A stretch of 63,863 bases of DNA, filler included, from Octopus bimaculoides (Eukaryota), in NCBI RefSeq assembly GCF_001194135.2. It is 8 parts of 8 records of this genome, joined end to end, with 100 filler letters (N's around TTAATTAATTAA, not from the genome) between each part and the next. Parts side by side here need not be neighbours in the genome. Positions count along the whole stretch, not along the records: positions 43,720 to 46,691 come from NC_068988.1; 7 more parts are not named here. One strand, written 5' to 3'. A model generated the notes under the pieces. That model was not told the origin of the DNA, did not search any database, and saw only the letters and a program-made list of their open reading frames with translations. Each line of letters begins with the position of its first letter. Within the stretch, counting starts at the first letter, position 1. Below are positions 9,541 through 47,149 of the stretch, in pieces. The position numbers were made by a program, and so were the translations under genes.

Positions 9541-11085
9541 GTCACTTACCGGTAATAACAGGACACCATCAGTTATGATCAAATTTCAGGTACAAGATGA
9601 AAAAGAAAATTACAAACACAAAAGACTAAAATAATACGAACTGCATTCAACAGTTCTCCGATACTTAGAACTCGCACAGAAGGTATAGTGTAGGTATAAC
9701 GCACAAACATACTTAGAGCATTCACTGGCATTACGCTTGGACCATGCAGAGGAACAACCTAAGTAAAACGTAACTGGTTCAGTTCACTGTGGAATAGCTT
9801 TGATTCCCCAATCCATCTTCCATAATAATAAAAAAAAACAACCCACTTAAATTACGCAACACTATGTTTGCACATCGAAACAAAATACTAAAAATCATTA
9901 GACCGTCTGAAGATGAGAGTATGTTCATGAACCAGATAGTGTTCATTCGTATAACTACTTCTCTTACCTTTCTGAGTCTATATTTCACCTCAGTCTTAGT
10001 CTCTCTACCACCAAAAGCTTACGCGAATCAATTTACGTTTCTACGGTCTGTTATTCAACTTTAGTACGTAAGAAGTGTTCTATTTTCTTTGCCCGATCTC
10101 TAAAGACTTCGTCTTACTTATACTTGTTTTAAACCGGTCTTTTTCGCCACTACATTCAGTTGCAAATTTACCTCTGGCAGACCATCTCTAGATTCCACAA
10201 ACTATGCCCAGAGACGATGTCGAACATCTAGTGTTTCCATTTTCCGTCTTCACACAACAACTTGACTAGGCATTTAATCATTCAAATGTATTGCTCTGGG
10301 ATCCCCTTGGTTATAAGCTAGATGAATGTTGCCGAATTGCTGTTCGAAGTCAATAAAACTATTGCCAATTATCAATGGAACACCACTCAAGATTGATGAT
10401 GTTCCGTAGATCGAGGATTTGCTCACAACGTAACTGTCCTCGTCTGAATCTTGTTTTAATTTCCGTAAAATTATATCAACGGTATTATGAAATCTCTTAG
10501 TAGCACTCTGCAAAAAATACCTTTCGTATGACTAACTTAAATGTAACTCCACGCCAGTTGTTACTATCGACTGTATATTCTTTATGATACTGTATATACT
10601 TCATAATTCTTTATGATCTGATTGGTCAGTGATTTTACAGTACTTGAGATTTGAAGTAACACATCTAGATCAGCAGCTATTATATTTTTCATTACCTTGA
10701 TCTTTCTTTCATATTTTCCACCTCAGAATCCAATTGTGGTTGATGTAGTTAATCTTCTACGTTAAAGAGACCTGTTTGGAGGTTGTTGCAACAATCTTAC
10801 GTGGAAGAGTTCCCTCCAACAGATTAATCAGTCCTGCCAACGCTAAAAACGTTTTTGTCTTTTTCGTCTTTTACTGATATAACTAGTAAACTGCTTGTCT
10901 CAGAAGAGAACTTCAGTGGAAGGGGTTACCAAGATGGAAACTTGCTTCCCTTCCAGACAGTTCTACGTAAAAGTCGAAACGATGCCCAGCAACCAATAAC
11001 CTCAATTTTAAAGTAAGGCAAATAAAGCAAAAATGCAGCGTAGAATGTTTGAGTGGAGTCTCAACAGGGAAACAACACTTGTTTT

Positions 11086-43410: not shown

Positions 43411-43754
43411 AAGACGATCCTATATATTGTATAAAGGATCGTGGGTAAGTTCAAAACAATGCGAAGAAAATGCCAGGTAATCACAAGAAAACAAATATAT
43501 GAATTAATGTAGACTTATATTGCATTCAAGGTATTGTTTTAGCCTTACACACGATCCTTTATGCAATATATTCTATATTCTACACAATGCTTCAAGGTAA
43601 TTATTCAACATACGTATATNNNNNNNNNNNNNNNNNNNNNNNNNNNNNNNNNNNNNNNNNNNNTTAATTAATTAANNNNNNNNNNNNNNNNNNNNNNNNN
43701 NNNNNNNNNNNNNNNNNNNGTATCTTTGTGCAGCTGAAGATTACTCTGCATTTT

Positions 43755-43965
43755 ACATTCAATGGCACGTGTAAAGACATTCGAGCGAGATCGTTGCCAG
43801 TGCCGCTGGACTGGCTCCTGTGCAGGTGGCACGTAAAAGCACTCACTACACTCTTGGAGTGGTTGGCATTAGGAAGGGCATCTGGCTGTAGAAACTGTGC
43901 CAAATCAGATTGGAGCCTGATGTAGCCATCCGGTTTCACCAGTCCTCAGTCAATGATGATGTAAT
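43755..43965 (+). mobile_element. RTE LINE 3' UTR fragment (family D)
   Basis: ggttggcattaggaagggcatc...gtagaaac...ccagtcctcagtcaa followed by (GAT)n. Confidence 0.85.
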
Positions 43966-44799
43966 GCTCACATTGCTTAAATAAATGGAGTCGCATGAAA
44001 CGATCGTACTGCATTAACCTGGAATATCCTTGTTGCTTATTTTGATATATATATATATATATGTGAATGCATATATATGCATGCACAAATTCATGTATAT
44101 ATGCATGCATACACATAGTTATGCATATATGTATGTATGTATGTGTGTATATCTATTTGTTTGTGTGTTTGTGTCTCTGTCTGTGTATGCATGTACATAT
44201 ATCTATATGTATGCATTATATAAATTCACTGCAGTTTCTGTTCTATTCCCCACCTCCACTTTCTTTTCTCCCCACCTTTTAATACAAGCAAACAAACACT
44301 TGCTTTACACACATCGCAGCATAACCCTTCACCTACTCTCCACCCCATTGCTCTCATCAACTAATTAATTAGCTGAAAGACATCAAATTCTACAACTGGG
44401 CATTGTCATTTGTCCATCCCCAAAATTCTTCACCAAGTAACAGCTTATTAGGCCTCCAGTGTATTCTCTGTAAATAATAATTCTTATGCACTATGCACTA
44501 ATGAATCTGATTTTCACTAGCAGATGTTCATGGTTGCTCTACTGCTTTACCCCCCACCATTCTTTGCATGTCACCCCACTGACTGACAAAATAGACTTAG
44601 CCACTTCATATACATACATACATACATACATACATATAGACACATACATGCATACGTACATATATATACACACACACACACACACATATATATACACATA
44701 TATACATAAATATACACATATATGCATAAATATATATGTATGCATATATGTGTATGTATATATATATATACTTACACATATATATGCATATATGTGTAA

Positions 44800-44850
<51 letters not shown>

Positions 44851-44924
44851 TATGTGTGTAAGTATATATATACATACATGGATATATATATATATATGTA
44901 TGCACAGTTTCTTACTTCTTTATT

Positions 44925-45144
44925 GCTCACAGGGGGCTAAACATAGAGGAGACAAACAAGGACAGTCAAAGGGATTAAGTCGATTAGATCGACCCCAGTG
45001 CATAACTGGTACTTAATTTAGCAACCCCAAAAGGATGAAAAGCAAAGTCAACCTCGGTGGAATTTGAACTCAGAATGTATTGGCAGACCAAATACCGCTA
45101 AGCATTTCACCCGGTGTGCTAACGTTTCTGCCAGCTCGCTACCT
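44925..45144 (-). mobile_element. SINE family B
   Basis: Minus-strand head aggtagcgagctggcagaaacgttagcac at 45144. Confidence 0.88.
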
Positions 45145-45150
45145 TTTGAA

Positions 45151-45301
45151 TTGACTGGACGGGACCCCGGGACAATGAGATCCTGGGGCTGCAATGTGCA
45201 TTTGAGGTGTCGATGTTCACTGAGTCCTACAATTTGCATTAGTTCACACGGATAGCCGCGCTCTTCATCGATGGACAAACTGAGTGATCCCACGTCCAGT
45301 T
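45151..45301 (-). pseudogene. 5.8S rRNA pseudogene, near full length and decayed
   Basis: Minus strand retains 5.8S landmarks in order: GGATCACTC, TCGATGAAGAGCGC, GAACTAATG, AATTGTAGGAC, TGAACATCGACAC, GCACATTGCAGCCCCAGG...CCCGGGG; many differences are CpG-type transitions. Confidence 0.88.
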
Positions 45302-45396
45302 CTGTCTCCCACGGTTTCTGTCTCCCAAATTCACTCAGAAGACATTGGTCAGTCTGGGGCTATCCTAGAAAACCCCTGTCCCAAGGTACCTTGCAC
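45302..45396 (-). mobile_element. Family-A-like SINE CORE segment directly upstream of the 5.8S copy
   Basis: gtaccttgggacaggggttttctaggatagcccc...gaccaatgtcttctgagtgaatttgggagacagaaac parallels family A ggcaccttgggcaagtgtcttctactatagcc...gaccaaagccttgtgagtggatttggtagacggaaac. Confidence 0.7.
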
Positions 45397-45430
45397 ACTT
45401 TCTTACGTACCTTATTAATCTGCCCTCTTG

Positions 45431-45905
45431 TGGAGGCATGTGGCTTAGTGGTTAAGTTGTTGGACCCATGATGGTAAGATTGTGATTTCGATTCCTGGAC
45501 TGGCCGATACGGTGTGCTCTTGAGCAAAACACTTCGTTTTTTTGTTGCACCAGTCCACTCAGCTGGCAAAAATGAGTAACCCTGTGATGACCAGTGTCCG
45601 GTCCAGGTGGAGAATTTATATGGTATGGAATCTGAGAAATCGGCCCTTATGAGTGAGCATGACTCAAGAAGGTAACCTTTACTTACTTTACTCATGATAG
45701 CAACATTGAGGTTTCAATTCCTGGTCTGGGCGATGTGCTGTGCTCTTGAGCAAAACACTTCATTTCTTTGTTGCTCTAGTGCATCCAGCTGGGAAAAGTG
45801 AGTAACCCTGCGATGGACTGGCGTCCCATCCAGGTGGAGAAAATACGCACCATGGAAACCAGGAAACCGGCCCCGTGATTCTGTATGACTCAGGGAGGAC
45901 CTTTA
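45431..45905 (+). mobile_element. Two tandem CORE-like SINEs (family G) with a V-SINE-like 3' segment
   Basis: ggaggcatgtggcttagtgg...tgtgctcttgagcaaaacactt...cctgcgatggactggcgtcccatccagg. Confidence 0.7.
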
Positions 45906-46340
45906 TCCTATCCTAAGCATAGAACATGGACATTAAATGATGGTGATGATGATGATGATGATATGTGTATGTATCTAAATGTCACCAAATTAATGATGGA
46001 TAAAACTACATGTATGCATATATATATGCTTGTGCGTACAAAATAAAGATAGAGAAAGAGCCAGAGAAGGAGAGAAAGGGTGGAGGTTGGAAAATGATTT
46101 ATCATAGTCTGGTCACATTTGCTATTCATTGTTCTCATTGTAGATTATCTTTGTAAATTAATCCTCCCACTAATTTAATCTCTTTTATAGTTTATAACAG
46201 ATACATCAAACTATGTTTTCCGTTTGATGTTCCCAGCTAATTGACAAGTCTCACTGGCTGGCACAAGGTCATCAGTGTAATCAATAGAATAATTACTGCA
46301 AAATGAAAAATATGATACCATTGTTTACTGATGTTCTTGG

Positions 46341-46590
46341 GTGGTGGCGCAATGGCCCAGTTGTTAGGGTAGCGGACTCGCGATTGTAGGATTGCGGTTT
46401 CGATTCCCAGACTGGGCATTGTGAGTGTTTATTGAGCAAAAACACATAAAGCTCTGTGAGGCTCCAGTAGTGGGTGGAGGTGAACCCTACTGTGATCTTC
46501 CTCTCTCTATTTCTTCCTCTTTCTGTTGTACCTGTATTTCAAAGGACCGGCCTTGTCACACTCTTTGCCACGTTGAATCTCCCCGAGAAC
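46341..46590 (+). mobile_element. SINE family C 5' part, followed by family A tail pieces either side of the gap (to about 47025)
   Basis: ggtggcgcaatggcccagttgttagggtagcggactcg. Confidence 0.85.
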
Positions 46591-47149
46591 TATGTTGCAG
46601 CACCGCCTTTAGTCGAGCAAGTCGACCCCAGGACTTATTCTTTGTAAGCCTAGTACTTCTTGTATCAGTCTCTTTTGCCAAACTGTTAATGNNNNNNNNN
46701 NNNNNNNNNNNNNNNNNNNNNNNNNNNNNNNNNNNTTAATTAATTAANNNNNNNNNNNNNNNNNNNNNNNNNNNNNNNNNNNNNNNNNNNNCTATGTGTG
46801 TCTTTGTGTCTGTGTTTGTCCCCACATCATCTAGTGTAACAATTAATGATGTTGGTATGTTTATGTCCCCATAACTAAGTGGTTTGGCAAAAGAGTATGA
46901 TAGAATAAATACAGGCTTTAAAAAATTTAAGTCCTGAGGTCAATTTGTTTGACCAAAACCCTTCAAGGTAGTGCTCCAGCATGGCCACATTCAAATGACT
47001 GAAACTAGTAAAAGAATAAAAGAATATTACAATAACATTAACTCCAGCAGGGGATGGATATAAGGTATTGAGATAAGTAACTCCAAGCTATGTAGTATTA
47101 TATAAAATTTAGTAATTTGCCATTTCTGCCTCTGTTCTGAGTATGTTAC

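What the first reader, a model, noticed from the sequence alone, without database searches (positions are those of the whole stretch)
45151..45396. Near-full-length 5.8S rRNA copy fused behind a SINE CORE-like module
Seen: on the minus strand a family-A-like CORE segment (45396-45302, with a duplicated gggagacagaa at the junction) runs directly into the 5' end of a ~150-nt 5.8S-derived sequence, followed a few bases later by a co-oriented family B SINE. No ITS, 18S or 28S flanks are recognisable. Known: SINEs built from tRNA, 7SL, 5S, 28S pieces and snRNAs are described; I do not know of a 5.8S-bodied one. Inferred: either a single template switch onto mature 5.8S during reverse transcription, or a member of a new SINE family that uses 5.8S as its body.
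Basis: partly seen in the sequence, partly recalled or inferred. Interest (0 to 1): 0.75.

Follow-up and report, generated by a model that had tools for sequence, protein, structure and literature searches.

The report
Octopus SINE–5.8S–SINE chimeric retrocopy
A decayed copy of 5.8S ribosomal RNA sits between a fragment of one octopus SINE and a complete copy of another, and all three were most likely pasted into the genome in one reverse-transcription event, which is a known kind of accident with an unusual RNA partner.

Summary
On the minus strand, 45303-45151 is a near-full-length 5.8S rRNA copy: Rfam 63.4 bits against a cut-off of 42, and 88% identical to true octopod-type 5.8S. Of its 18 differences, 17 are transitions and 12 lie at CpG, so it is a dead pseudogene. 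No ITS, 18S or 28S sequence is present.

Upstream lies a headless internal (CORE) fragment of a tRNA-headed SINE, with an exact 12-nt repeat at the junction. Five bases downstream lies a complete second SINE.

A 15-nt direct repeat, GTAAGAAA[G/C]TGTGCA, occurs only twice in the piece and brackets the whole 481-nt composite. No sub-element has flanking repeats of its own. CpG loss is similar in the 5.8S part (12 of 20) and the SINE B part (12 of 18).

Best reading: one LINE-mediated insertion. Reverse transcriptase copied SINE B RNA to its 5' end, jumped to 5.8S rRNA, then jumped to SINE A RNA. This is a tripartite chimeric retrocopy, a known kind.

I could not test whether it is a single locus or a member of a 5.8S-bodied SINE family. 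I put the family reading at about 10%.

The parts
45392..45406 (-). 5' copy of the flanking direct repeat (putative target-site duplication), GTAAGAAAGTGTGCA
   Evidence: The pattern GTAAGAAASTGTGCA has exactly two matches in the piece against 0.01 expected; 0 of 100 shuffles gave 2. The extended alignment is 21/25, and 0.17% of random complex 35-mer pairs reach that score.
45312..45391 (-). Internal (CORE-domain) fragment of a tRNA-headed SINE ('SINE A', OR2-like). It is 5'-truncated with no head, and it ends inside the SINE at ...TGGGAGACAGAAACCG
   Evidence: Alignment with the full copy at L001 18765-18615. BLAST seed at L001 18627-18655.
45300..45311 (-). Second exact copy of TGGGAGACAGAA (first copy 45316-45327), lying between the SINE A fragment and the 5.8S. 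It is a junction scar from re-priming or slippage
   Evidence: Read directly from the sequence. The first copy plus ACCG matches SINE A in L001.
45151..45303 (-). 5.8S rRNA retro-pseudogene. It is near full length: sequence homology to true 5.8S covers nt 5-151 of 159, and Rfam aligns model positions 1-154
   Evidence: Rfam 63.4 bits. 88% identity to true 5.8S in L002/L003. 18 differences, of which 17 are transitions and 12 lie at CpG; CpG count falls from 20 to 8.
45146..45150 (-). 5-nt filler TTCAA between the 5.8S 3' end and the SINE B 5' end. It matches neither parent
   Evidence: 5.8S homology ends at 45151. The SINE B 5' end is defined by the TSD-bounded copy L001 10143-10377.
44911..45145 (-). 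Complete 'SINE B', running from AAGGTAGCGAGC... to ...AATAAAGAAGTAAG, with no simple-repeat tail
   Evidence: 86.4% identity over 235 nt to L001 10143-10377, which is bounded by its own 21-nt TSD (19/21).
44901..44915 (-). 3' copy of the flanking direct repeat, GTAAGAAACTGTGCA. Its first 5 nt overlap the last 5 nt of SINE B
   Evidence: In L001 the SINE B 3' TSD also overlaps the terminal AG of the element.

Best explanation
This is a single, old, non-functional tripartite chimeric retrocopy in an octopus genome.

Inferred sequence of events: a LINE reverse transcriptase began target-primed reverse transcription on a full-length SINE B RNA at a target site whose sequence resembled the SINE B 3' end. 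It copied SINE B to its very 5' end and added about 5 untemplated bases. It then jumped to a 5.8S rRNA molecule about 8 nt from its 3' end and copied it to within 0-4 nt of its 5' end. Next it jumped into the middle of a CORE-type SINE A RNA, at a spot sharing (G)AAAC(C) with the 5.8S 5' end, and stuttered once, giving the 12-nt repeat. It copied about 80 more bases and was then joined to the target, leaving a 10-15-nt target-site duplication.

Shown: the three parts, their co-orientation, their direct abutment without tails, the flanking repeat, and the equal CpG decay.

Inferred: the order of events, the enzyme, and that the locus is unique rather than one of a family.

The insert has since lost 60% of its CpGs and does nothing as a 5.8S gene.
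For: 1. The parts are identified by independent references: Rfam and true rDNA for the 5.8S, and O. vulgaris copies for SINE A and SINE B.

2. All three parts are on the minus strand. They are joined with 0-5 nt between them and no A-rich or microsatellite tail between parts.

3. rDNA homology stops within a few nt of both mature 5.8S ends, and the flanks are SINE sequence rather than ITS. This points to processed 5.8S RNA as the template, not rDNA.

4. The 15-nt repeat GTAAGAAA[G/C]TGTGCA occurs only at the two outer ends of the composite (0.01 expected). Among all 11 combinations of sub-element boundaries, only the outermost pair has a flank repeat: score 13 against 8 or less.

5. The 3' repeat abuts and overlaps the tail-less SINE B end, exactly as in the independent SINE B copy in L001, which has a 21-nt TSD.

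6. CpG decay is similar in two of the parts: 12 of 20 lost in the 5.8S and 12 of 18 lost in SINE B.

7. There is precedent. Bipartite and tripartite chimeric retrogenes formed by single and double template switches, TSD-flanked and including the mouse B2-U6-L1 chimeras, are described in PMC2104539.
Against: Copy number was not measured, so 'single event, single locus' rests on priors.

The classic criteria state that the 3' part is 5'-truncated and the 5'-most part is full length. Here the 3' part (SINE B) is full length and the 5'-most part (SINE A) is an internal fragment.

The first 5 nt of the flanking repeat are also SINE B's own terminal GTAAG. With only two SINE B copies to hand, I cannot fully exclude that AAACTGTGCA belongs to a SINE B subfamily 3' end.

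The two reference 5.8S sequences come from unnamed organisms.

The 12-nt repeat could equally be a later replication slip.
Confidence: 0.65

Rival explanations
1. The locus is a 5'-truncated member of a composite SINE family: tRNA head, CORE, 5.8S body and a SINE B-type 3' part. A master copy would be transcribed by Pol III and amplified by a LINE.
For: The architecture is what a 5'-truncated copy of such a family would look like, and the TSD fits equally well. SINE families are known to arise by module exchange through RT template switching (PMC4758252).
Against: No second copy was seen anywhere I could look. There is none in 20 kb of O. vulgaris. The protein-space searches returned only true rDNA ORFs carrying the 5.8S part. 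These nulls are weak. This copy has no promoter head. No 5.8S-derived TE is listed in the 2024 rDNA/TE review, and 5.8S does not occur in the text of the 2025 L1-chimera survey or the 2026 O. vulgaris repeat annotation. The junction scars (5-nt filler, 12-nt stutter) look like a raw one-off event.
Confidence: 0.1
2. The chimera formed at the RNA level before reverse transcription, through ligation of RNA fragments (RtcB-type) or a fused transcript. It was then retrotransposed as one RNA.
For: RNA ligation before retrotransposition is documented for U6/L1 chimeras (PMC6789731, listed; mechanism summarised). It would also give co-oriented, tail-less junctions inside a single TSD.
Against: From general knowledge: a full-length Pol III SINE B RNA carries a 5'-triphosphate and mature 5.8S a 3'-OH, and neither is an RtcB substrate. 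The 5-nt untemplated filler and the 12-nt re-copied stretch are typical of RT end-jumping rather than ligation. None of this was tested here.
Confidence: 0.12
3. Three independent events happened to land next to each other: a SINE A insertion, a 5.8S retro-pseudogene inserted into it, and a later SINE B insertion abutting the 5.8S.
For: SINEs make up about 11.6% of the O. vulgaris genome (PMC13282606), so neighbouring SINEs are common. The piece itself holds at least six SINE copies or fragments.
Against: No sub-element has flanking repeats of its own (scores 3-8, against 13 for the outer pair). The 5.8S has no 3' tail that a LINE could have used. SINE B starts 5 nt after the 5.8S end, all parts are co-oriented, and CpG decay is equal.
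Confidence: 0.08
4. It is a DNA-level fragment of an rDNA unit (an orphon) or an assembly artefact.
For: rDNA fragments do escape arrays in some animals (review text).
Against: Homology to rDNA stops at the 5.8S ends. The flanks are SINE A and SINE B, not ITS1 or ITS2. The CpG-decay pattern shows a long residence as methylated, non-homogenised DNA.
Confidence: 0.02

Closest known systems
Tripartite chimeric retrogenes formed by double template switching of LINE reverse transcriptase: M. grisea WEIRD-MgSINE-MGL and mouse B2-U6-L1 (Gogvadze et al. 2007, PMC2104539)
   Same: Three different transcripts are fused directly in one orientation, without tails between them, and flanked by one pair of short direct repeats. 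A small, abundant structural RNA sits in the middle or at the 5' end, and a retroelement is at the 3' end.
   Different: The 3' template here is a complete SINE rather than a 5'-truncated LINE, so the first jump was from the template's end. The 5'-most part is an internal SINE fragment, not a full-length RNA. The middle RNA is 5.8S rRNA. The host is a cephalopod.
LINE-1 chimeric insertions with small RNAs in primates: U6, U3, U5, 5S, tRNA, 28S, 7SL, Y and 7SK (PMC11838501)
   Same: Sense-oriented fusion of an abundant non-coding RNA to a retroelement, with TSDs. The same candidate mechanisms apply: template switching or RNA ligation.
   Different: 5.8S does not occur anywhere in that paper's text (0 occurrences). 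The carrier here is a SINE, and the RT is an unknown octopus LINE.
SINE28, the 28S rRNA-derived SINE, and other rRNA-containing TEs (review PMC10946416)
   Same: A Pol I-derived rRNA segment embedded in a SINE-like retroposon.
   Different: SINE28 is an amplified family. No amplification was shown here, and the rRNA is 5.8S, for which the review lists no TE.
Octopus CORE-SINE OR2 (Ohshima and Okada 1994, as cited in PMC4758252)
   Same: The 5' fragment belongs to a tRNA-headed octopus SINE whose body carries the CCTTGG..AAGT-type CORE motif. Octopus OR2 is the CORE-SINE reported for this genus.
   Different: Identity with OR2 itself was not tested, because no OR2 sequence was available. Only about 80 nt of the body is present here.

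Membership tests
5.8S rRNA (Rfam RF00002) | Score at or above the curated gathering threshold over the full model | tested here: met
   63.4 bits against 42, model positions 1-154
5.8S rRNA (functional gene) | Lies in an rDNA unit between ITS1 and ITS2, with 18S and 28S nearby | tested here: not met
   rDNA similarity is limited to 45153-45299, and the flanks are SINEs
5.8S rRNA (functional gene) | Sequence kept by concerted evolution and selection | tested here: not met
   18 of 149 positions differ from two mutually identical true 5.8S sequences. 12 of 20 CpGs are lost. The score is 63 bits against 117
LINE-mediated chimeric retrogene (criteria in PMC2104539) | Parts directly joined in the same transcriptional orientation | tested here: met
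   All parts are on the minus strand, with 0-5 nt between them and no tails
LINE-mediated chimeric retrogene (criteria in PMC2104539) | Whole chimera flanked by short direct repeats (TSD) | tested here: met
   A 15-nt repeat (14/15) occurs at the outer ends only, with p about 0.002
LINE-mediated chimeric retrogene (criteria in PMC2104539) | The 5' part is a full-length copy of a cellular RNA | tested here: inconclusive
   The 5.8S is near full length (nt 5-151 of 159 by homology). The 5'-most part, however, is an internal SINE A fragment
LINE-mediated chimeric retrogene (criteria in PMC2104539) | The 3' part is a 5'-truncated retroelement copy | tested here: not met
   SINE B is complete to its 5' end as defined by the TSD-bounded L001 copy. 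This implies an end-to-end jump rather than an internal switch
SINE family (amplifying retroposon) | Many dispersed copies sharing the same architecture and junctions | not testable with these tools
The collections I could scan contain no octopus DNA: the SINE B control pattern gave 0 hits
SINE family (amplifying retroposon) | Internal Pol III promoter (tRNA-type head) at the 5' end of the unit | tested here: not met
   The SINE A head seen in L001 (18765-18700) is absent from the window copy, and ARAGORN finds no tRNA. A truncated copy could still belong to a family
CORE-SINE (for the 5' fragment) | Conserved CORE central domain behind a tRNA-derived head | not tested
   The resemblance to the MIR/CORE motif CCTTGGGCAAGT is recalled from memory. 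Octopus OR2 is cited as a CORE-SINE in PMC4758252. No CORE consensus was available to align

The most novel reading that the evidence does not exclude
The composite is a 5'-truncated copy of a so far undescribed cephalopod SINE family whose body is a 5.8S rRNA module: tRNA head, CORE, 5.8S and a SINE B 3' part. It would be the first SINE known to have captured 5.8S, a Pol I product.
Probability: 0.1. Interest if true: 0.65.

Novelty: new member of a known kind. Interest (0 to 1): 0.33.

Why it matters
If the best reading is right, the locus is a clean fossil of at least two consecutive template jumps by an octopus LINE reverse transcriptase. It has a complete donor SINE, an untemplated filler, a micro-homologous landing site and a stutter. 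That is the process thought to shuffle modules between mollusc SINEs ("jigsaw" SINEs, PMC4758252).

It also adds 5.8S rRNA to the RNAs found in chimeric retrocopies. 5.8S does not occur in the text of the primate L1-chimera survey, nor in the transposable-element listing of the rDNA/TE review that I read.

It has no functional consequence as an rRNA gene. Only if the junctions prove to be multi-copy would it become a new class of SINE.

Tried and rejected
No depth, copy-number or RNA evidence was obtainable.

2. Fishing for other copies in protein space.
- A 103-aa open frame across both junctions gave one hit in the 5.8-billion-protein index, an O. vulgaris protein with an exonised SINE B.
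- The full HMMER scan of 1.84 billion representatives gave 13 spurious ORFs over true rDNA plus that same protein. None carried a junction.
- A concatenated six-frame query with X at stops returned nothing, not even the known hit, so that search was wasted.
- P0001 as query added only one O. bimaculoides EF-hand protein.

3. Window ORFs are not in the protein collection, so the source contig could not be retrieved. P0015 has no contig on record.

4. The junction pattern GACRGAACTGGAYRKGGGATCAC gave 0 hits in genome contigs and 2 in metagenomes. Neither hit contains a 5.8S, and the one I read (L004) is GC-rich sequence unrelated to the window, so I treat both as chance matches. The SINE B control pattern also gave 0 in genome contigs and viral contigs, so these collections hold no octopus DNA and the nulls carry no weight.

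5. The reference rDNA organisms could not be named.

6. Rejected: the mir-297, mir-466 and mir-3149 hits in 44030-44220 and 44600-44905. All are far below their gathering scores and lie in TA/TG/CA microsatellite.

7. Rejected: reading the 5' flank as a remnant of the SINE A head, as MAFFT placed it. That match is only the heptamer GTAAGAA, whereas the match to the 3' flank is 14/15.

8. Rejected: a second TSD candidate beyond the microsatellite, GAAGTGGCTAAG at about 44595. It needs two gaps and was judged by eye only.

Full report
**What is there**

The piece 43720-46691 is SINE- and microsatellite-rich animal DNA. The only protein-space relatives of its open frames are Octopus vulgaris and O. 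bimaculoides entries that contain an exonised SINE. A 20-kb stretch of O. vulgaris chromosome OX597819.1 (L001) carries copies of the same SINEs. The genome is therefore an octopus; I could not determine the species.

**The 5.8S copy**

Rfam places a 5.8S rRNA on the minus strand at 45303-45152. It scores 63.4 bits against a gathering score of 42, with E = 9e-15, over model positions 1-154.

To get a proper yardstick I translated the open frame that runs through the element and scanned 1.84 billion representative proteins. The best hits are spurious ORFs over genuine rDNA. Two of them led to contigs with 18S, 5.8S and 28S in order: L002 and L003, each with a 5.8S at 117.4 bits. Their 5.8S sequences are identical to each other although their spacers differ.

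The window copy aligns to them at 88%. BLAST of the entire piece against both rDNA units finds similarity only at 45153-45299, which is nt 5-151 of the 159-nt 5.8S. Nothing matches ITS1, ITS2, 18S or 28S.

Of the 18 differences in 149 aligned positions, 17 are transitions and 12 are CpG to TpG/CpA changes. The CpG count falls from 20 to 8. This is the signature of a methylated, unselected genomic copy, so the element is an old pseudogene.

**The flanks**

*Upstream (minus strand).* 45391-45312 aligns with the body of a complete tRNA-headed SINE in L001 (18765-18615, minus strand). The shared sequence runs ...GGCACCTTGG..GTGAGTGAATTTGGAAGAGAGGAACCGAAAG... The window copy has no head and stops inside the SINE at ...TGGGAGACAGAAACCG (45312).

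The motif CCTTGG..AAGT resembles the CORE domain as I recall it from MIR. Octopus OR2 is cited as a CORE-SINE (PMC4758252). I did not test identity with OR2.

Between this fragment and the 5.8S lies a second exact copy of TGGGAGACAGAA, at 45311-45300; the first copy is at 45327-45316. True rDNA reads GAAACC|CTGGACG at the 5.8S 5' end, and SINE A reads GAAACCG at the point where its homology stops. So there is a 5-6-nt micro-homology at the switch site.

*Downstream.* After a 5-nt filler (TTCAA, 45150-45146) a second SINE begins. In L001 this 'SINE B' (10143-10377) is bounded by its own 21-nt target-site duplication (19/21). That duplication abuts both ends with no tail. This defines the element as AAGGYRRCGAGC......AAAGAARTAAG. 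The window copy (45145-44911) is 86.4% identical over 235 nt and complete at both ends.

**One insertion, not three**

The 15-mer GTAAGAAA[G/C]TGTGCA occurs exactly twice in the piece, at 45406-45392 and 44915-44901. That is immediately 5' of the SINE A fragment and at the 3' end of SINE B. Only 0.01 matches are expected, and no shuffle gave two. The similarity extends to 21/25, a score reached by 0.17% of random complex 35-mer pairs from the same DNA.

I scored flank repeats for all 11 combinations of sub-element starts and ends. Only the outermost pair stands out, at 13 against 3-8 for the rest. Neither the 5.8S alone, nor SINE A+5.8S, nor SINE B alone has its own duplication.

The 3' repeat overlaps the last 5 nt of SINE B. 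The target upstream of the repeat (AATAAGGTAC) also resembles the SINE B 3' end (AATAAAGAA). This is what is expected if the nicked target annealed to the RNA's 3' end. The L001 copy shows the same overlap.

CpG decay is matched across parts. 12 of 20 CpGs are lost in the 5.8S. 12 of 18 sites that are CpG in the L001 SINE B are lost in the window SINE B.

No tail separates the parts. A 5.8S cDNA on its own would have had no 3' sequence for a LINE to act on.

**Mechanism**

The best-supported explanation is target-primed reverse transcription of a full-length SINE B RNA, followed by two template jumps.

1. The first jump went from the 5' end of SINE B, with 5 untemplated bases added, to 5.8S rRNA about 8 nt from its 3' end.
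2. The second went from the 5' end of the 5.8S into SINE A RNA at the micro-homologous site. A 12-nt re-copy occurred there.
3. Ordinary 5' truncation and joining to the target then completed the insertion.

Because both 5.8S borders lie within a few bases of the mature ends, processed 5.8S RNA rather than pre-rRNA or rDNA was the template.

Bipartite and tripartite chimeras of exactly this logic are documented, including mouse B2-U6-L1 and a TSD-flanked fungal triple (PMC2104539). End-to-end jumping with untemplated additions is a known property of non-LTR reverse transcriptases; this is my recollection of the R2 work and was not checked here.

The locus departs from the published criteria in two ways. 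The 3' part is full length rather than 5'-truncated, and the 5'-most part is an internal fragment.

A ligation-first route, RtcB-type as shown for U6/L1 (PMC6789731), is the main mechanistic rival. The expected end chemistries of a Pol III transcript and of mature 5.8S, together with the filler and the stutter, argue against it. I could not test it.

**Family or one-off**

- The DNA collections I could scan contain no octopus DNA. A 22-nt SINE B control pattern gives zero hits. So the absence of the junction pattern there means nothing.
- The protein-space searches recovered no second junction. They also barely sample octopus repeats.

On priors, such chimeras are usually unique. This copy has no promoter head, and its junctions carry raw scars. 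The 2024 rDNA/TE review lists no 5.8S-derived element, and 5.8S does not occur in the text of the 2025 primate L1-chimera survey or the 2026 O. vulgaris repeat annotation. I put the family reading at about 10%.

**Age**

Non-CpG divergence is 6 differences in about 109 sites, roughly 5.5%. Overall divergence is 12%. With the calibration quoted in PMC13282606 (JC 0.065 is about 18 My and 0.2 is about 56 My), the insertion is roughly 15-35 My old. It may therefore be shared among Octopus species. This is a rough inference.

**Verdict**

The unit is a 481-nt SINE A fragment / 5.8S / SINE B chimera inside one target-site duplication. It is a new member, in both RNA partner and host, of a known kind of retro-insertion. 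It has no function as an rRNA gene, and its interest is modest unless the junctions turn out to be multi-copy.

Noticed in passing
window 45428-45962 (+): Two co-oriented copies of another tRNA-derived SINE lie head to tail. The first (about 45428-45685) lacks the last roughly 45 nt and any tail. It runs directly into the second, which lacks about 35 nt of its head and ends in (GAT)n (repeats D5 and D6). This may be another template-switch or unequal-recombination dimer.
   Followed up: partly
window 44030-44220 and 44600-44905: Long TA/TG/CA microsatellite blocks produce dozens of sub-threshold Rfam hits to mir-297, mir-466, mir-3149, mir-1277 and others. All score 20-54 bits against gathering scores of 75-100. 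They are low-complexity artefacts, not miRNA genes.
   Followed up: yes
window 46335-46691: A further tRNA-headed SINE on the + strand starts at about 46340. From about 46560 there is sequence whose reverse complement carries the ...CTGGGGTCGA..TCGACT.. module that is also present near the 3' end of SINE B (repeat D7). This suggests a 3' module shared between octopus SINE families and running off the piece's edge.
   Followed up: no
window 43780-43960 (+): This looks like the 3' part of yet another SINE (...GGCACGTAAAAGCACTCACTACACTC...CCAGTCCTCAGTCAATGATGATG), cut by the piece's edge. I identified it only by recollection of octopus repeats.
   Followed up: no
L001 10001-10351 (O. vulgaris OX597819.1), and P0015: The annotated O. 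vulgaris 'hypothetical predicted protein' P0001 is largely a translated SINE B copy (residues 48-116). An O. bimaculoides EF-hand protein (P0015) also carries a SINE B-derived stretch, 81% identical over 37% of P0001. These are SINE exonisation or annotation artefacts.
   Followed up: partly
L002 431-589 and L003 3093-3251: Two rDNA contigs from unnamed sources (Logan run ERR13252635 and assembly GCA_024449705.1) have identical 5.8S sequences but different ITS. Their 5.8S begins AACCCTGGACGGGGGATCAC, which departs from the Rfam consensus start. They are probably octopod, but I could not name the organisms.
   Followed up: partly
tool behaviour: A 1053-aa concatenated six-frame query with X at stop codons collected 6931 word candidates, but none scored E of 10 or better. 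That includes P0001, which scored 37 bits with the 103-aa query. X-rich concatenated queries seem unusable with this tool.
   Followed up: no
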